NCBI GenBank assembly: GCA_946965045.2
Contig: OX337229.1
Coordinates: forward strand, 1,922,001-1,986,000
Length of the DNA: 64,000 nucleotides
Direction: 5' to 3'
Origin: Epithemia pelagica
Lineage: Eukaryota; Protista; Bacillariophyta
Part shown: piece after piece, positions 24,658 to 34,500 of the stretch
Numbering within the stretch: position 1 is the stretch's first letter
How the letters are laid out: each line of letters opens with the position of its first letter
Program-made: the position numbers and the translations under genes
The notes under the pieces: generated by a model
What the model was told of the DNA's origin: nothing
Database searches by the model: none
What the model saw: the letters and a program-made list of their open reading frames with translations, nothing else

Positions 24658-25673
24658 ATGGTGGCTACCCACACACGGAAAGATGACGAGCTCACGGAGT
24701 TGCTGACGAAGCTTTACACTATTCAAGAAGACATTGGTGCGAAACCAAAAACATCTCAAGAAGAGAAGAAACAAAAGGCGGAGAATGTTGCCACCATGGG
24801 AAGTACAAAGAAATCACAGAAGAAGGGTTCCCGCTTTCTCGACTTGAAATCAACAATTCTGGATCGTCTCAAGACCATTCATTCTCTCTTGAAAGAAACA
24901 AAAGAAAAGGAACAAGCAGGCATGGGCGGTGACAATGCCAAGGACATTATCAAAATGCAAGCGGAAATTCGAGAGCAGATTCGGCAAGCCGGTGACGAAT
25001 GGAATGAATTGGATGAAATTTATAAAAGAGAAGCCCGTAAGAAAAAGTCAAAATTCACAGAGGAAGAACTGGAGGTGCAATCCGAACTTGTCCGTCGTTT
25101 GGCCGCCGAAATTGAAAAAGTCAAGGAGTTGCAAATGCGTGGATACGCAAGAGGGCGTGATGCAGGCACAGCAGTCTCTCTCAATACCAAAGCGTTGTAC
25201 GCAGATTCCGGTAAGCGATTCTTGATTTGTGCTTTATATGTACTGTTGGTCGCTAGTCATTGGACTCACTTTTTTGCGATGTAGTTGGCAACGGAAGTAG
25301 TAAAAAGAAGGAACCATGGGCCGGCACTGGAGGTGGTGTTGCCCTGACGTCTGGTCAGCAGCAACAGATTCAGCAACTAGAGGAACGAGATGCTGATTTT
25401 GATCGACAGTTGGATGAGATTGGTGAAGGTATTCAGGATCTCGCCGAGATTGCCCAAATGCAAGGAGAAGAAGTAAAGAGACAGTCAGCCATGCTTGACC
25501 AAGTCAACAGCAAAATGGATGCTGTCAATGAACGCATGCTTGGAGTCAATGCTAAAATGAAGGAAACCCTGGAAGAAGTTGGACGGGCATCGGACAAACT
25601 TTGTGTCGATATCATGTGCATTGTCTTGGCGATTGGTTTTGGTGCAGTCATCTACAACTTTACGCAGAACTAA
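24658..25673 (+). CDS. Syntaxin-family Qc-SNARE, SYP7-like (2 exons, about 313 aa)
   Basis: Intron 25211-25284 joins ..LYADS|VGNGSS.. in frame. Helical Habc-like region, SNARE heptads (DADFDRQLDEIGEGIQDLAEIAQMQGEEVKRQSAMLD) and a C-terminal TM segment (LCVDIMCIVLAIGFGAVIYNF). Confidence 0.88.
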
Positions 25674-25802
25674 GAACATGTGGAAGCCATGGGTGGAACA
25701 ACATACTTTGTATTTCTAGCGTAGTGGGACTCCTTGCCGTAACCGCTGACCATAAAATCATTTAAAGTACAAGAGCAGTTGCTCTGCATTTCTCTAGTGT
25801 TT

Positions 25803-28800
25803 TTACATTGTATGGTACCTTCCCGCTTCCGGATCATGAACCGCGGATGTGGTAAAGTCATTATTGAGTGTCGTGTAGACAGGTCGTGTGCATACCACAC
25901 GTGCTTTCCGTACAAGAACTTTCAGTTGTCCTGCCGGAACGAGGTAACAGAGATGGGGATCTGCTGGATCGGCACGGCTCAAAATGCCCACAACCAAGCC
26001 ATCGTCATTGACGCAGGGACCTCCGCTATGACCAACACTGGCGGACAAAACAAGTGCTTTTAGTCAGGATGTGATACAAAAAATTCAGTATGGAAAGCAA
26101 GCAAAGTCAATCACTTACATGGTAGGACAACGAGTAACAATTTCTTCTCGGGGCGAAAACGTGTTTTTCGAGGCCGAGTCCGAAGAGGAGCTACTGTCGT
26201 CAGACATTGTATTGGAAAAGACGCGACAGATGTATCCTTTGGCAAAGTCAGGCGAACGCAGAATCTGGCGGCGAGCATCCGGATCAGAGACTCGTTCTCG
26301 TTGACTGTAACCCAGAAGTCTGACAGGTTCACCGAGTTCAAAGTTGGTCTCCACTTTCAACTTGATCAAATTCTCCTCCTTCATCTTGGACGCGTCCAGA
26401 ATAACTTCGGGAACATTACAGCCAGGTTCTTCTTCATCCACGTCTTGCTCCATTCGAGTTGTTATCTTGAGAACGCATGCATCAACATTATTTTTAACGT
26501 CATCGGCAATGACTTCAGCAAAATATCGCCAGACAGCATTTTTGGAATCTTTGCCAACATTCACTCCAACAACAACCTTGGCGTCCTCAACTCCCATGTA
26601 CACTGTGCCGTAATGAGGACCTTCTTCCATATTGAACAACACCTGAAGAAAACAACGTGCAAAAGTCAGACATTTATACGACGAAAGGAACAAAGGATCC
26701 AGAACTCATTCTTACATGTCCCGCAGTCACAATCAAACCAAACTTTTTGTCAGCAACGAACCCGGATCCAACGCTGCGAATTTGCTGGAGTTTGGGATCC
26801 CACAATCCCACCAGAACAACACTGGGAAGAATTTCTGGAACTGATTTGATCGGGGATGGATAAACATGAGGATCGTGGATAGGTAAAGGCTCTTCGTTGC
26901 TAGAGCCGATCAAATCGTGAATCTTGACACGATGTCCACGACGACAGACAATCGATGCCTCTCTTCGTTCTTCACCCGCCGCCACCACTTCATCCCATCC
27001 CCAGGTGCTGGCACGGCGAGGATTGCCGCGTGCCAAACACTCAGGACAAACAATTTGCATATTCACATTGTTAAAGGTGGCGAGTGATGCTTGCACCGAG
27101 TCCAAAACTGCTTGATATCCTCCTTTGAATAATTTGAGGCCGGCCAAACCGGCCTGTCCTTTTCCACTCACAATCACGCGCTGCATATTAACACGCATCG
27201 CATCCGAAGCAACACAATGGGTGGAATTCTGGTCAACTATGGTCACAAATATCTCCACAAAACTCTCCCGGAACTCGTCACTTTCCCTATCAGGAAAGAC
27301 GGTTCCAATCTTGAGTAGCATGGCCGACTTCCAACATATAATCTGATGAATTCGAGCTGGTCCCACTGACTGTCGACTATGTTCCTCTACAAAGTCATGC
27401 CTGGACGCGCGTCCCAGGGGCGTGGATCGTGTCCGTGCCAGTTGTTCCTTGGGGGCAGAGGAAAATTCTCTCGTAAAAATGTACAAATCTCGTAATAGTG
27501 CCACGGCAACGTATTCAAACAAATCGGATGGAGCCCCATCGCGAAAAAGCCACGAATTACACAATGTCGTGGTCCAACTTTCGGGTGCTCGGTATCGCCA
27601 TATATCACCAGGGTCCGTTTGCGACAAGAGACTGGGAACAAAGAAGACATTGTTGGAAGAAGAAGACGCTGAGGCTTCCAAGCCACCTCCTCCTGAATGA
27701 CAAGGTAGACTTCCGAAGGGAATAAAGATTCCAAATTGCACCAACAAGCGTTCTAGGAAATAAAACACCGTGGGTCCACAGGTCGAATTTTCGTTCATTT
27801 GAGAATAACGGTCCGCCGCTTCTCGCATAAATGACATGCTCCGCCACAACATAGCAGCATCTTGATCGGACAAGAGCGGACAACTCGTCGCGGCACCTGC
27901 CCCCAAGGTTTTGATAATTTCATTTTCTTCAAATTGTTGTTCACTGTAGATGCACTGCATATTCATAAATTTGCGAGCATCAGACAATTCTCGTTTTAAG
28001 TCATTTCGTAAAATACAGGACAAGGCCGACACAAGCCATTGACGACTCAGTACAATAAAGCTGGAAAGCACATTTTCATCGTCTTGACGACCGCTTCCAA
28101 AATACAGTAGTTCTCCTACGGAGGACAAGAAGTGCAACGCCGGAATGGCTTGATCGACGGGGACGACATCTCCTACCGCTCCCAAGACATGGTCCAGTCG
28201 AATGAGTTTGTGTTGATGTTTGACACTCTTGGTATATTCCAAAATCTCCACCGTTCCCGGTGGAACCGGCGTACCCACATGTTCAAAGACTGACCGGGAG
28301 GTATCCGTGGCAATGGCCACCATGGTTTCTTGAATTTGCTGAATACCGTAGTGCTGAGAAAAGTTGACACTCAATACATTCCGGGAATCGTCCAAAACAA
28401 TGTTGGGCATACTTTGTTGGTTGGCATCGAAATCGGCTGCCGCCTCTTTCCATTTTACATAGTTTTCCAGCATTTCATACAATTTGCTACAACGTCGGTG
28501 CACTTCCTTCTCTTCCATACCATCGGGGATAATGGCCACAGGCAAAATGGCTGACCGGGGAGCTCGCTGGGCAATCCGGTCCACCCACGACAAGACACGG
28601 CTGGCAATGTCTTGATGCAAGGCACGATCGGCTTCGGCCAAGACTTGTTCTCGGACAAAGTCATTGTGTTGCTCGTCGCCCTCTTCGTCGGAATCGTAAT
28701 CAAAGACGGGATGGACATGAGTATTGTGGCAAGCCAAATCCCAAACCAAGAGATAGAGCGATTCATGAGAGAAGAAGAGCGATTGGGTACCAGGATGGGC

Positions 28801-30930
28801 TCCAAAATTGGGCAAGACGGTATCTTGACAACTGGCATTGGAGGCGCCTTGGACATCCCAGATTTGAAAATTCACATCCGATGCTGACCAGGTATGGACA
28901 TCCAATCCCAAGGTGGTACGAGTGCGTGGTTTCTTTTGAGATTCTCGAATTGCCCGAGCCAAGGCCGACTTGGCTGGTCCCACGGATCCCACCAATAACA
29001 CCTTGAGCATATCATTGTGCACATGCTTATCGGATCGTTGTGCTTGCGACAGGGGAACAGAAGATCCATCCGACTTGCCTTTTTGGGAACGCTGTGCGTA
29101 CGACGAGGATGCCTCCAATTCACTACCCAATTCCAAATCCGTGTTGGTTTCATGTTCGGCTCGAACCAACATGGCCTGTACATCGGGTGCCTCACCCTTA
29201 TCAACTTTGAAATCAGCTTCCACCGGGACCATGGAGGCAGGTATATCGCCCTTGCGTAGCTTGATATCCAAATCATTTTGATTGTGATGATCGTCGTAGA
29301 TTTGGTCGTATTCGACCACCACGGCTGTGGCCACATGACCCTGCTGGACCTGATCTTCGGTTCCTAGGGGAGTGGCCGTGACGGACTTAGTGGCACCTGA
29401 CGATGCCGTAGTAGTAGGAGTGGTTTCTCCTAGAGGTTCGCGGGGAGGTGGATGATTCCATCCAGCGACTGCCGCGGCGGCATGAGGATGTTGGGTTGGA
29501 GGGAGAGCGGCCGCGACGGCAGGTGATTCGCCCGATGGATGAGCGAGTCCTGCTCGTGCTTGCACTTGCTCGGCCACCTCTCGGGCCGCGTCTTGACGCA
29601 TTCGTCGTGATCCTCGTTCGCGACGACCCCCCTTGCCCCTTCCATGATGATGAGATTGTGGCGCTGCAGCGTGTGTTCCTGCACCGCCCGCCGAATGCGT
29701 CGATCCATCTCCCAGAGAAGATTGCCGTGCGAGCATATGTGAGGCATGCGTCGGATGACTGGCACTGTTGAGGCTCATGGTGGATGCCTCCAGACCATCC
29801 GGCATTCTCATGGCCATGGCGGTCGAAGCCGCTGCGGCAGATCCCGTTTGCACCTCCAAGCCCGTCAAGGCGGCAGCTGGAGTGGTCGCTGGTACATCCC
29901 CTGCTGCCGATTCATGGCTGGTGGCACGATGATGTTTTTTCTTGTTGCGTGCAAACCATTTGCCAATTTTTCGAACTCCTCGTCGCATCCGACCAGGACG
30001 AATGGGTTTGTGTGGTTGGAAAAAATGAGGTGACCCGTAGAGAGCCGAGGGGTCTTCTGTCGTCTCATCCGTGCTGTTGCGACGACGATTGGCTGTGGAC
30101 CCATCCTGTGCATGTCCATGTTGTTGCGGAGGGGGTGGAGAAATGGCAATCAAATCACCATCGACCAAAATATATTGGACTTCTTCATTCATGACATCTG
30201 CGACAGTGCGAGCCGATACTGTGGTCGTAGGATGAAGGGCGCCATTTGCGGCGTGGACCGCACCACTGGCTACTGGATGAAAGGCTTGCGCATCAGCTTC
30301 ACTGCGAATGGACAAAACAGCGACATTGTCTTCTGGGGATGACTGTGGTAGTTGCGTTTGTCGAGGTTCGACATGGAGAGCTGTATTGATGTTGTGGTTG
30401 CCTCTTGGCGGTGGTGCTTCATTGTTGTCATTGTGGTTGTCTTGCGCGTCACGCGATCCCGAGGGTGGATACAAAATATGATCCATTGAGGTTCGCACCA
30501 AATCACGCACAAAGGTGGCCACGACGGAAGGAGAGTTTGTTGTGGTGCTGGCGGAGGCTGCCGTAGCTTGGACTGTCGGTTCCGCACTAGTGGAGTCTCC
30601 GACATGAGTGCCTTCGACCACCACCACAGCTGGAGCTACCGGTGGATAGTGCCATTCACGCAACAAACTGCGTTCTGGATTGGACGATTCGGCCAGGTTG
30701 TGGACGTCACCATTGTGATGAGTAGGTGTAATGGCTGGCTCCTCTCGAACAAGCTCCGCTGCAGGTGGTGATGAAGGCCGTGGTGCATCGTTGTCGGATG
30801 GTTCCACCAAGCCTGTTGTGGCCGTAATTAAGGAACCGGGTTCACTGGAAGTACTTGTGGTGGGTGCCTCGGCTGTGGCGGTTGCGACAGAAACAACCGA
30901 TGATGCTGCGGCGGCGGCGGTAGTTGCCAT
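25803..30930 (-). CDS. Roco-type protein: disordered N-terminus + Roc GTPase-like + COR + C-terminal trypsin-like serine protease (3 exons, about 1,657 aa)
   Basis: Roc: LKVLLVGSVGPAKSAL, TTLGLDVHTW, FQIWDVQG, HPGTQSLFFSHESLYLLVWDL. COR: LHFLSSVGELLYF, FIVLSRQWLVSALSCIL, FFVPSLL, CPEC...CRRGH. Protease triad: IVTAGH|V, VDACVL, GHSGGP. Introns 26715-26643 and 26118-26038 are both GT..AG and keep frame. Confidence 0.85.
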
Positions 30931-31574
30931 TGATTTTCAACAACCAATAACCAAAAACAACAAGCACTTTGCTGATATCTGGAGCGCTTTTTGTTTGTTG
31001 ATTGCGCTGGTAGTGTTGATTGTCTTTTTGTTTGTTTCTCTGTTGACGATCGATTTTGCACGACATCAGTCGTCGTCTGAGTTCCCTCTCTCCATCCACG
31101 CTCGTCGCCATGACGACAAGAAGACAGAAGAAGATGTCACAGCGTTTGCTTCCTTGTCGCTCCTACACTATCATCTAAAGTAGTTAACCGCTGGTACAAT
31201 TTACTTAATGTGAGAAGACGGGAGGTTTTTGTATAGGATGAAGAGTAGTCTGATTATCCACGACTTGAAACGATCGATTCATGATTCCTTTTACGCGGGA
31301 CCCAATCTTACTGACCTCGTGACTCGACTCTACTCGTGACTTAAGCAGTGCACGCGATGAAAGGAGTACCGGACGCCCGGGAGTTTCGACGGAGGGTGTC
31401 TCTTGTCTCTCGCTCTCATTCTCTCAAAATCTCCGCCGCACACAATCAACAATAGTGTTTTGGAAGAGAGAAGATACAAACACAACAAGAATACGGTACC
31501 GTGGGCTCTCGATTGTCATCAAGGTGGACCGTTCCCAGAGGTTGGACTCTTTCAAATCTAGAGTTTCTGAACGA

Positions 31575-34500
31575 ATGGGAGGTTCCAAGCGTCGGAGAAA
31601 GGGGGAGACCGATGCCTCATCCAGGCCTCAGGCCAAGGCCAAAAACGAAGGGTAGGTGGTGGTTATTTCTTCCTACCTCTTGTGTGCGACTGTGTCACAA
31701 TGTATGAGGAGGTCCAAAACGTCGACCGTAAACAAGTTTCTCTCGTCATATGTTTCGTTTGCTTACCTCTTTGTTCGCGTAACCTTTTTCTAGAGAGGAG
31801 ACGGCCGTCACAGACGACCGATTGGAGTCCATTCTGATGGAGTTCGTCCAAGGCCTAACTCCGTGGACGGCGGCAAGCCCGGATCGAACGGCCGCGATCA
31901 AAGCCTTGTGTTCGGGTACGTCGTCCGTCTTGTCACTGGACCCATCGCCCTCGTCGGGCAGTAGTGGTAGAAAGGACCCGAACCAACCAATGGAGGAAGA
32001 CAACCAAGATCCCACGACCCTTGTCCCATTCAGTACCGGAGAAGCAACCGCCACTGCGTTGGCTCCCGATAAGGCAGATACAAGAACGCCTAAGAATCGA
32101 GATGTAGCTGGAGACCCGCAATCCTTGTCCAATACGACCACAACGACAAGGTCAACAAACGAAAGTATGGAATCATCGGAGGTGTATGGTTACTGGATGC
32201 TTTTGGGCTCGCATATCTTGCATCGGTTGATGATTGAATATTCCACCAGTTTTCTTTCTCAAGATATGCCACGCAATACTTCAATAGTCTCCGTGGGACA
32301 CTCGTACCGTCGAGTATTGTGTTACCTATGCCATGAACTGAGTGCAGCTTTCTTGGGGACACGGAACGAAACTTTAGATCCCGAAAACCCGCCATCGGAA
32401 AAGACACAAGGGAACCATGACAGTCGAACGTGGGAGATGGCCAGTACAGGAGCCAGTCGCCACTGGCAAGCCCGACTAGTGATCACCATGGCAGCTGCCA
32501 TTGCCGGTCATGCGCTGGCCCCACCACCCACCAAGAGTCGTCGCTCCTCCTCCAAGTCGTCCTCCTCATCCTCCTTGGGTAACTTGCACACCAATCCTCT
32601 GGATGTGTCGGCATGGGCCGCAGCAACCCTGTGTGTAGAACGACTGTTGGAGGTTGGTGGAAGTGGCGTCCCTCCTCCTCCTCCTGCTCCTCGTGCAACG
32701 ACCACAACGAATACCAAACCCGCGGCTTCGTCATCCCAAACGGGGGTACTGGGACCAATTCTAGGTACCTCTGCCCACGTATCGTATTACTGGCGAACCA
32801 TGGCCCGCCCCCTTCTTCAATCATTGGCCACGAATGGGATCCAATCGCAGCTCTCGGAGTGCATTCATACCGCCTTTGGTGAAGCACGGGGAGATTGGTC
32901 TCGTGAACGGGCCGCCATGACCGCCTTGCATTCTCAGTCCATGTCGGCCATTCAATCAGCCTTTGTCGAATTAACCAAATCTGTTCCTCCCTTTACGTTG
33001 GAAGGACGTTTGCCCTATCGTCGATGGGCTCCCATTGTTCTGGATTGGTACTCTGTTGGACCCTTGCTGGCACAATCGAGACTGGTGGTGAATTCTGCTT
33101 TCGATTGTCCTCCGAGTATTCCCCTGGCACTCTTGGCAAAATGGGTCCACTGGATGGGGGACTGGCCGGGCTGCAGCACCAGTAACAACAAGAGTGGAAC
33201 AAAAGCGCTCACGAGTAGCACTCTGGACGAGTACTTGAAGATACTCTCACCCGGAGCTGGACGAAAAAAGAAGGTACCTGTCCCCAATCTACCCGAGATT
33301 ATGACACAGACCCTTGAATACCATGCGCAGTCTTTGGTCACGGACGGCCGTCCTGTCATGAGGAATGATGAGGATTGGGCAGGAACAATGACAATGCAAC
33401 AAGAGAAAACTGGCAACGATACAAAGAACGAAAGAGGATCCAGCGCAGACTGTGATTCTGTCAAGCAAGACGTTGGATTCACGTGTTACCCATTTATGGC
33501 ACAGTTTTTGTGTGACTTGGCCAAACTTTATGGTAAATCAGATGTTACCCTGGTGGGACTTTTTGAAACAGCCGCCGGCGCCGCAGTTCTTCAGTACCAA
33601 ATTGTGAGCGATGTGAAATTGCTCTATTGGGCCTTGCGGCGAGCCATGGTACTTTTGCAGCAAATGGTTCGTGCCCCGGGTAATTACGACCACCTTGTTA
33701 CGCAACCCTTACTATCCTCCACCACAACCACGAAGCTGGATGACGTCTTGGGAGCACGGGTGGGCGGTCGGAAGCGCAAGGCCGAAACCACGTTCAGTGC
33801 GCCGTCCTCCCAACCCGGGATTCATACCTTTTGCGAACGGTTTGCCCTCTTTCTTCGGGCAATGCATCCACTGGAAGACTCTTCCTTTTCAACTGCAGGA
33901 CGCAAAAAGAGTCCAAAGTCGGTCTCGGTCGGACAAGGTTTTGTCCATACCATTCTGTCAGTCATTGAAGCGTGTTTGGACACGAGAACCGTCATGGATC
34001 CAATCTCTACTATTCCTACAAATGCCAGTGCTGTTGTACGAGTGCAACAAGAAGAAGAATCAATGAGTACGACTCGACGGCGCAAACGGAGAAAGAAAGA
34101 AGAACCGGACGCAAGTTCCAGAACCGTTGCGGCAAATGATGGCCCTTTGTCCGAGGTCGAAATGACACCCGGACGAGAAAATAGGACTTTTCAGTAAGTT
34201 ACATGTGGTGTGTCTCAATCTTGTTGTTCCAGTCTGGATTCGCTCTCATGTGTCGTTGCTGGGTTTCTACTTCTCAAAAGACCAATCAGCAAGGAAAGAT
34301 CGTCATTAGCTTGCGTAGCTCTGGATATACTGCATGATCTTTTAGATGAGACACATCCAGTGGGGGAGGGTTTCTCATGCCTAGAACCTGGAACTATTGG
34401 CACTGAGGAGCTATGTCGTATCGTCTGGTTGGGTGAAATTGTTGACAAGGTTCTTTTGCGGACACCCAACTGGGAGAAATCAGTGGGTCCATCCAAGGGA

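What the first reader, a model, noticed from the sequence alone, without database searches (positions are those of the whole stretch)
25803..30930. LRR-less Roc-COR protein with a degenerate GTPase and an intact C-terminal trypsin-like protease
Seen: Roc and COR motifs are followed, across two clean introns, by a chymotrypsin-fold domain with a complete His (TAGH), Asp (DACVL) and Ser (GHSGGP) triad. The roughly 630-aa N-terminus is Ala/Thr/His-rich and low-complexity, with no LRRs. The P-loop reads GSVGPAKS (Ala at the conserved Gly of GxxxxGKS), and the G4 region (VAIIPD) departs from the usual Roc THxD. Established: Roco proteins usually carry LRRs plus kinase or death domains; ROCO LRR-GTPases are proposed immune receptors in brown algae; trypsin-like domains act as effectors on NTPase-based immunity/cell-death proteins. 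Inference: a dimerisation- or nucleotide-gated protease switch, possibly in diatom stress or programmed-cell-death signalling, and possibly a pseudo-GTPase.
Basis: partly seen in the sequence, partly recalled or inferred. Interest (0 to 1): 0.7.

Follow-up and report, generated by a model that had tools for sequence, protein, structure and literature searches.

The report
Diatom Roco pseudo-GTPase fused to protease
This is a real, expressed diatom gene that joins a relative of the Parkinson's-disease LRRK2 switch module, with its nucleotide-binding motifs eroded, to an intact HtrA-type serine protease; it belongs to a conserved but unstudied diatom family.

Summary
A three-exon minus-strand gene (30930..25803) encodes a 619-aa disordered N-terminus, then Roc, COR, a conserved Cys/His module and an HtrA-like protease with an intact His/Asp/Ser triad. 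An assembled RNA contig from the same organism skips both introns exactly, so Roc-COR and the protease lie on one mRNA.

The fold model of the window's Roc-COR matches only Roco proteins (LRRK1, LRRK2, bacterial Roco). The ortholog's protease model matches MarP, DegP and HtrA1.

The odd P-loop is a family trait, not a private defect. In 111 relatives the second P-loop glycine is Asp (76), Glu (19) or Ala (5, including this gene), and the guanine-specificity motif is missing in every relative inspected.

New here: diatoms also carry a sister clade with LRRs, a canonical GxxxxGKT P-loop and the same Cys/His module and protease. The window's clade is therefore a derived branch that lost the LRRs and the canonical switch motifs.

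Best reading: Roc-COR serves as a nucleotide-independent scaffold for an active protease. Nothing found supports an immune or cell-death role.

A 2024 paper already notes Roco proteins with C-terminal peptidase domains in stramenopiles, without a function. Novelty is moderate.

The parts
25803..30930 (-). Whole coding region: three exons and two introns, 1657 codons by arithmetic
   Evidence: ORFs and splice sites; spliced contig of run X6 covering 30957..25500; ortholog P0002 has the same junctions
26716..30930 (-). Exon 1 (1405 aa): disordered N-terminus, Roc, COR, Cys/His module, and the start of the protease up to the catalytic His
26643..26715 (-). Intron 1, 73 nt, GT..AG, phase 0, directly after the His codon
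   Evidence: Sequence; skipped in X6 and X2 contigs
26119..26642 (-). Exon 2: middle of the protease domain, including the catalytic Asp (codon 26483..26481) and a Ser/Asp-rich loop (26207..26160)
26038..26118 (-). Intron 2, 81 nt, GT..AG, splits a codon after its second base
   Evidence: Sequence; skipped in X6 and X1 contigs
25803..26037 (-). Exon 3: GHSGGP with the catalytic Ser (codon 26027..26025), the last strands of the protease, an unconserved tail and the TAA stop
29074..30930 (-). N-terminal 619 aa: Ala/Ser/Thr/Pro/His-rich, low hydrophobicity, no Pfam domain, no LRR. A few short motifs are conserved in the clade, including a basic patch around aa 310-335
28408..29073 (-). Roc domain (aa 620-841), with an acidic insert between strand 4 and helix 3
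   Evidence: Family profile finds LRRK2 Roc at E 1.4e-9; fold model; Foldseek
28966..28989 (-). P-loop GSVGPAKS, with Ala at the second conserved glycine of GxxxxGK[ST]
28846..28857 (-). G3 motif DVQG. DxxG is kept; the residue after the Gly is Ala where the LRR-bearing sister clade has Gln (WDFAGQ)
28522..28539 (-). Position of G4, reading VAIIPD. There is no [NT]KxD or THxD motif; it aligns with THLD of LRRK2
27076..28407 (-). COR domain (COR-A plus COR-B, aa 842-1285)
   Evidence: Pfam COR-A in 52 of 54 family members, best E 5e-10; Foldseek alignments of about 670 columns to LRRK1, LRRK2 and C. tepidum Roco
26896..27063 (-). Conserved Cys/His module (C1295, C1298, C1329, H1333) between COR and the protease. 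Probably binds zinc
   Evidence: All four residues invariant in 49 sequences; also present in the LRR clade; model pLDDT 84-93
25806..26847 (-). HtrA-like chymotrypsin-fold protease domain, spread over all three exons. No PDZ domain follows
   Evidence: Profile finds HtrA1 at 1.8e-8; ortholog model pLDDT 87; Foldseek finds MarP, DegP, DegQ, Deg1, HtrA1 and DegS at E about 1e-11 to 1e-12

Best explanation
The gene encodes a cytosolic multidomain protease of the Roco family. It belongs to a diatom clade that arose by duplication of an LRR-Roc-COR-Cys/His-protease gene. That clade then lost the LRRs, and its crown group changed the P-loop glycine to Asp, Glu or, in this lineage, Ala. The guanine-specificity motif is non-canonical in every family member inspected, in both clades.

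Shown: the gene model and its splicing; the Roc-COR and HtrA-like folds; the invariant catalytic triad; the clade-wide loss of canonical G1; and the existence of the sister clade with a canonical P-loop.

Inferred: the Roc domain no longer cycles between GTP and GDP. The same Gly-to-Ala change in RhoA (G17A) abolishes nucleotide binding. Roc-COR would then act as a fixed scaffold for dimerisation and docking, holding and regulating an active HtrA-type protease. Control would come from other features: oligomerisation, the Ser/Asp-rich loop that sits where the HtrA sensor loop L3 lies, and short motifs in the disordered N-terminus. The likely job is regulated cleavage of specific cytosolic proteins, not pathogen sensing.
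For: - Splicing and a single mRNA.
- Ortholog with the same exon junctions.
- Roc profile finds LRRK2 at 1.4e-9.
- Roc-COR model has pLDDT 83.6 and pTM 0.85, and the top 29 Foldseek hits are all Roco proteins (LRRK1 at 3e-17).
- COR-A found in 52 of 54 members.
- Protease fold and triad.
- P-loop column in 111 relatives: D 76, E 19, A 5, N 4, G 3. No G4 motif in any.
- Sister clade with LRR_8/LRR_4, GMAMAGKT and WDFAGQ.
- Tree: the LRR-less clade of 43 rows has SH-aLRT 100. Two early branches keep GxxxxGKS and the crown has D/E.
- RhoA G17A cannot bind GDP or GTP: PMC3460580.
- About 50% identity over the domains across raphid pennates.
Against: - The P-loop Lys (109/111), the Ser/Thr (94/111), the switch-I Thr and the DxxG Asp stay conserved. 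That is unexpected if the pocket were simply dead, so some phosphate or metal ligand may still bind.
- Three members have a Gly at the P-loop position.
- No binding, oligomer state or protease activity was measured.
- The fold tool returns no coordinates, so contacts between domains could not be examined.
- No substrate, localisation or phenotype is known for any member.
Confidence: 0.55

Rival explanations
1. The Roc domain is still a working nucleotide switch with an unusual pocket. It binds GTP, ATP or another phosphorylated ligand despite the altered P-loop and missing G4, and this gates the protease.
For: The P-loop Lys and Ser/Thr, the switch-I Thr and the DxxG Asp are strongly conserved. 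Three members have the canonical Gly. The sister clade looks like a normal GTPase.
Against: The glycine before the Lys is replaced in 108 of 111 relatives, mostly by a charged residue. No guanine-specificity motif is present in any member. DxxG itself decays in several sublineages, to WDVLT or WDVSS. The equivalent RhoA G17A mutant binds no nucleotide.
Confidence: 0.2
2. It is an immune or programmed-cell-death executioner. An NLR-like platform releases a protease effector on infection or stress.
For: The ancestral layout, LRR then switch then effector protease, resembles sensor-switch-effector immune proteins. Brown-algal ROCOs are proposed immune receptors (PMC11378527). An unverified note reports a Kelch-Roc-COR-TIR gene in the same genome.
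Against: This clade has lost the sensor repeats. It is conserved and the named genomes hold only one or two copies, rather than an expanded, fast-evolving set. I found no expression or phenotype data linking it to infection.
Confidence: 0.15
3. The protease domain is a non-catalytic binding module, and the protein is a pure scaffold.
For: No activity has been measured. Repurposed trypsin-like domains exist, for example MamO (PMC4794232, listed).
Against: His, Asp, Ser and the GxSGGP oxyanion motif are invariant or nearly so in 49 diverse sequences. That is the signature of a working active site.
Confidence: 0.05
4. The architecture is a gene-model artefact: two neighbouring genes read as one.
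For: Many database entries end inside COR or at the catalytic His.
Against: Those entries are ORF calls cut off at introns. Exon 1 is one open frame from Roc into the protease. A spliced contig joins all three exons. Complete MMETSP transcripts of relatives carry both parts.
Confidence: 0.02

Closest known systems
Roco proteins (LRRK2, LRRK1, C. tepidum Roco, M. barkeri Roco2)
   Same: A Roc G-domain is followed directly by COR-A and COR-B. The model aligns over about 670 columns to these structures, and the Roc sequence profile finds LRRK2 Roc first.
   Different: There are no LRRs and no kinase. The P-loop glycine is replaced and G4 is absent. The output domain is a serine protease reached through a Cys/His module.
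Diatom LRR-Roc-COR-protease clade (e.g. Pseudo-nitzschia multistriata VEU35608.1, Odontella aurita A0A7S4J5Y0, Thalassiosira oceanica THAOC_31278)
   Same: It has the same COR, the same CxxC...CxxGH module and the same protease with its triad. Identity to the window's clade is 30-37% over the shared domains.
   Different: The sister clade has N-terminal LRRs, a canonical GxxxxGKT P-loop and DxxGQ. The window's clade has a disordered N-terminus and eroded G motifs.
Brown-algal ROCO group 3 and related stramenopile ROCOs with a C-terminal peptidase domain (PMC11378527)
   Same: Roc-COR is followed by a PA-clan peptidase (IPR009003). The paper says some related SAR ROCOs share this.
   Different: These are only listed in that paper, with no analysis of motifs or function. 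I could not fetch their sequences, so their relation to the two diatom clades is not tested.
HtrA / DegP / DegS / MarP (Rv3671c) serine proteases
   Same: Chymotrypsin fold, with TM-score by target of 0.7-0.78. The GxSGGP motif and the order of the triad also match.
   Different: There is no PDZ domain and no signal or membrane anchor. A Ser/Asp-rich insert sits where loop L3 lies. Roc-COR takes the place of the usual regulatory domain.
Engineered nucleotide-free small GTPases (RhoA G17A, and by my recollection Ras G15A)
   Same: They carry the same substitution, Ala for the glycine that precedes the P-loop lysine, as occurs naturally in this gene. That RhoA G17 is this residue is from my own knowledge of the RhoA sequence.
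   Different: Those are laboratory mutants of single-domain GTPases. Here the change is natural, fixed in a lineage, and sits in a clade where Asp or Glu is the rule.

Membership tests
Roco family | Ras-like Roc domain immediately followed by a COR domain | tested here: met
   Profile finds LRRK2 Roc at 1.4e-9. COR-A is found in 52 of 54 members. The Foldseek top 29 hits are all Roco proteins and the alignments span the tandem.
Roco family | Functional GTP-binding motifs (G1 GxxxxGK[ST], G3 DxxG, G4 [NT]KxD or THxD) | tested here: not met
   G1 has Ala at the second Gly, and Asp or Glu in most of the clade. G4 is absent. G3 is kept. Nucleotide binding itself was not measured.
Roco family | N-terminal LRRs (common in the family, not obligatory) | tested here: not met
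   No Pfam hit in aa 1-619 at E<=0.1. The LRR regions of sister-clade proteins find nothing in the window by tblastn.
HtrA (MEROPS S1C) proteases | Chymotrypsin fold with His-Asp-Ser in that order and a GxSGG motif | tested here: met
HtrA (MEROPS S1C) proteases | One or more C-terminal PDZ domains | tested here: not met
   The protein ends 73 residues after the catalytic Ser. No PDZ hit in Pfam or in the precomputed Pfam lists of relatives.
HtrA (MEROPS S1C) proteases | Trimer-based oligomers with allosteric loop activation | not testable with these tools
   No multimer modelling and no model coordinates were available.
Stramenopile ROCOs with C-terminal peptidase (PMC11378527, group 3) | Roc-COR plus a C-terminal PA-clan peptidase domain | tested here: met
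   The architecture is shown. Phylogenetic membership with the brown-algal genes was not tested, because I had no sequences for them.
NLR/STAND-like immune receptors | Sensor repeats, then an NTP-driven switch, then an effector | tested here: not met
   There is no sensor domain and the switch motifs are eroded. The effector part alone fits.

The most novel reading that the evidence does not exclude
The clade is a natural nucleotide-free Roc. The Asp or Glu that replaces the P-loop glycine would occupy the phosphate site as a built-in mimic. It would be held by the still-conserved Lys, Ser, Thr and Asp, and would lock Roc-COR in one conformation that sets the activity of the fused protease. 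This would be the first Roco pseudo-GTPase I know of. It would also be a natural experiment on what Roc-COR does without a GTP cycle, with a GTP-competent, LRR-bearing paralog in the same group of organisms as a built-in control.
Probability: 0.25. Interest if true: 0.75.

Novelty: new variant of a known kind. Interest (0 to 1): 0.55.

Why it matters
Roco proteins are studied mainly through LRRK2, where it is still debated how the Roc-COR GTPase controls the output domain.

Diatoms offer a matched pair. One clade has LRRs and a canonical GTPase. The other has neither. Both drive the same protease. Comparing the two could separate what Roc-COR does as a scaffold from what it does as a switch, using a protease read-out that is easy to assay.

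For diatom biology, this is a conserved and expressed regulatory protease of about 1,650 aa with no assigned function. At least one ortholog is misnamed in public databases.

Tried and rejected
- A COR family profile against PDB sequences found nothing. COR was confirmed through Pfam on family members and through the fold search instead.
- The single-sequence PDB search gave only weak Rab and Arf hits.
- The ESM Atlas feature search returned only the family's own cluster, without taxa.
- The 'protease-less' relatives are ORF calls that stop at introns, not real variants.
- I looked for a second family member in the window and found none.
- I checked whether the two clades are tandem neighbours in Mayamaea. 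They are not within 10 kb of each other.
- Literature searches for Roco plus diatoms, Roco plus protease, pseudo-GTPase plus Roco, and HtrA plus diatom cell death found no functional study.
- The fusion-artefact reading was rejected on the RNA evidence.
- The three exons of the window were never joined. The protease was analysed exon by exon, and through the ortholog P0002 for the fold.
Full report
**Gene model**

The region holds one gene on the minus strand.
- Exon 1 is a single open frame from the ATG at 30930 to 26716. An in-frame stop lies three codons upstream of the ATG.
- The frame continues after a 73-nt GT..AG intron (26715..26643) into exon 2 (26642..26119).
- After an 81-nt GT..AG intron (26118..26038) that splits a codon, it continues into exon 3 (26037..25803, TAA).
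- By arithmetic the CDS has 1657 codons.

The pieces were searched by reference. For the whole protease domain I used the database ortholog P0002.

**Expression and splicing**

I laid public runs on 25500..31200.
- Run X6, from the same organism as the DNA runs, holds one 5772-nt contig. It lies on 30957..26714, 26640..26119 and 26037..25500, so it skips both introns exactly.
- A marine metatranscriptome (X1) shows the intron-2 joint, and another metatranscriptome (X2) shows the intron-1 joint.
- A DNA-like run of the organism (X3) keeps both introns.
- These are contigs, not reads, so they say nothing about expression level or transcript ends.

Even so, the joints show that exon 1 is spliced to the rest of the protease. 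Exon 1 already runs from Roc into the protease.

The Epithemia clementina protein P0002 has the same residues across both junctions. It is 82% identical, and 84% over the Roc-COR region. The window therefore comes from a close relative of Epithemia.

**Domains**

On the window pieces alone, Pfam gives only sub-threshold hits: Roc 6.4e-5, COR-A 3.4e-4 and Trypsin_2 2.4e-3. The family gives firmer support.
- The word-index search found at least 181 relatives. Every one that carries an organism name is a diatom (Epithemia, Seminavis, Mayamaea, Nitzschia, Cylindrotheca, Pseudo-nitzschia). Most carry precomputed Roc, COR-A and Trypsin_2 hits.
- A Roc profile finds LRRK2 Roc first (1.4e-9), then M. 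barkeri Roco2 and LRRK1, and only then Rab proteins.
- COR-A is found in 52 of 54 family members, best E 5e-10. A COR profile found no PDB sequence.
- An AlphaFold model of the window's Roc-COR (666 aa) has pLDDT 83.6 and pTM 0.85. Its 29 best Foldseek matches are all Roco proteins, with alignments of about 670 columns: LRRK1 at 3e-17, LRRK2, C. tepidum Roco and M. barkeri Roco2.
- The protease profile finds HtrA1 (1.8e-8), HtrA2 and DegP.
- The model of the ortholog's C-terminal 341 aa has pLDDT 87. It matches MarP (Rv3671c), DegP, DegQ, plant Deg1, HtrA1 and DegS at E about 1e-11 to 1e-12, with TM-score by target of 0.7-0.78.
- No PDZ domain follows the protease.
- Between COR and the protease lies a module of about 55 aa with invariant CxxC...CxxGH, modelled with confidence. 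It probably binds zinc. This module was not part of the original finding.
- The first 619 aa have no Pfam hit at E<=0.1, low hydrophobicity and an Ala/Ser/Thr/Pro/His-rich make-up. A few short motifs there are conserved in the clade.

**The G motifs**

In an alignment of 111 relatives that cover the P-loop:
- The glycine before the P-loop lysine is Asp in 76, Glu in 19, Ala in 5 (the window and its closest relatives), Asn in 4 and Gly in only 3.
- The P-loop Lys (109/111), the Ser/Thr (94/111), the switch-I Thr and the DxxG Asp and Gly are mostly kept. DxxG decays in some sublineages.
- Where LRRK2 has THLD, the clade has a variable xxPxxM stretch. None of these 111 relatives has a guanine-specificity motif.

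The Gly-to-Ala change is the one made in RhoA G17A, which cannot bind GDP or GTP (PMC3460580). That RhoA G17 is the glycine before the lysine is from my own knowledge.

**A sister clade**

The exhaustive profile search found 315 cluster representatives at E<=1e-30. Among them are proteins of 1700-2100 aa with these features:
- Pfam LRR_8 and LRR_4 repeats
- a Roc domain above Pfam's threshold
- a canonical GMAMAGKT P-loop and WDFAGQ
- the same Cys/His module and the same protease

Named members come from centric and pennate diatoms: Odontella aurita, Thalassiosira oceanica, T. exigua, Skeletonema marinoi, Chaetoceros, Pseudo-nitzschia multistriata and P. pungens, Nitzschia inconspicua, Mayamaea and Cylindrotheca.

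Several species have both clades: Nitzschia inconspicua, Mayamaea pseudoterrestris, Cylindrotheca fusiformis and Odontella aurita.

I built a maximum-likelihood tree of 53 rows.
- It separates the LRR-bearing rows (9) from the LRR-less rows (43, SH-aLRT 100).
- Inside the LRR-less clade, two early branches (P0121, P0102) still have GxxxxGKS. The crown of 39 rows has Asp or Glu, with two nested Gly.
- The window groups with Epithemia (98).
- The root is not established by an outgroup. Because GxxxxGK[ST] is the general state of P-loop GTPases, the polarity is clear: LRRs and the canonical P-loop were lost in the window's clade.
- Rows left out: I kept every third of the close clade members to limit the size of the tree. 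Five rows have long branches and uncertain places.

**How it most likely works**

Shown: an expressed protein with a Roco-type Roc-COR, a conserved Cys/His module and an HtrA-type protease whose triad and oxyanion motif are invariant.

Inferred:
- Roc no longer cycles nucleotides.
- Roc-COR acts as a fixed module for dimerisation and docking, since COR-B mediates dimers in studied Roco proteins.
- The protease is regulated by oligomerisation and by the Ser/Asp-rich loop. That loop lies one strand before the catalytic Ser, where HtrA proteases have the sensor loop L3.
- The disordered N-terminus probably carries docking or phosphorylation sites.

The continued conservation of the Lys, Ser, Thr and Asp of the pocket is not explained by simple decay. 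Either a ligand still binds, or the new acidic side chain sits in the phosphate site. I could not look at model coordinates to test this.

**Biological role**

I found nothing that links the family to immunity or cell death. The ancestral layout (LRR, switch, protease) does resemble sensor-switch-effector proteins, and brown-algal ROCOs are proposed receptors (PMC11378527). But this clade has lost the sensor, and it is conserved across raphid pennates. The named genomes hold only one or two copies; Epithemia clementina, for example, has P0002 and the divergent P0112. A regulatory, housekeeping-type proteolytic role seems more likely, but that is a weak inference.

**Novelty**

PMC11378527 (2024) notes three brown-algal ROCOs with a C-terminal peptidase domain (IPR009003). 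It says they nest among SAR ROCOs, some of which share that domain. No motifs or functions are discussed. The 2019 Roco review holds none of the terms protease, peptidase, caspase, stramenopile or algae. No paper in the library combines pseudo-GTPase with Roco.

So the architecture is known in outline. The split into two diatom clades, the clade-wide P-loop change and the Cys/His module appear to be new observations. I rate it a new variant of a known kind, with interest of 0.55.

Noticed in passing
window 24658-25673 (+): A convergent neighbour gene in two ORF pieces, with a weak Syntaxin 6/10 N-terminal hit (0.014) and a coiled-coil, membrane-anchored C-terminal piece. It is probably a Qc-SNARE. 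Its end lies about 130 nt from the stop of the Roco gene, and the X6 RNA contig runs on across the gap.
   Followed up: partly
window 28630-28691: One contig of the DNA-like run X3 skips 62 nt (GG..GG ends, not a multiple of three) inside the acidic insert of Roc. The RNA contig of X6 does not skip it. It is probably an assembly or haplotype artefact.
   Followed up: no
window 25817, 25828, 28075, 28678, 29411, 29544, 30454, 30825, 30829: Nine single-base differences between the window and the X6 RNA contig. Four of them are shared with X3. They look like allelic or strain variation, not editing.
   Followed up: no
window 31822-34197 (+): A 791-aa ORF that diverges from the Roco gene's 5' end, with no Pfam hit at E<=0.1.
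   Followed up: partly
P0019 (Seminavis robusta), P0279 (Nitzschia inconspicua): Public names look wrong or uninformative. The Seminavis ortholog is called 'NADH dehydrogenase (ubiquinone) complex I, assembly factor 6', and the Nitzschia sister-clade protein is called 'Miro domain containing protein'.
   Followed up: no
P0349 (JGI metagenome protein, 1296 aa): A distant relative whose precomputed Pfam list holds U-box (PF04564) and WWE (PF02825) as well as COR-A and Trypsin_2. It may be a further architecture of the family.
   Followed up: no
P0027 and P0296 (Mayamaea pseudoterrestris; L001): The LRR-less and LRR-bearing paralogs lie on the same 788-kb contig, with locus tags 000739300 and 000740300. 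They are not within 10 kb of each other.
   Followed up: partly
runs X1 and X2: Near-identical spliced fragments of this gene occur in a marine metatranscriptome (2016) and in a metatranscriptome labelled subsurface (2023). This organism or a very close relative is therefore active in those samples.
   Followed up: no
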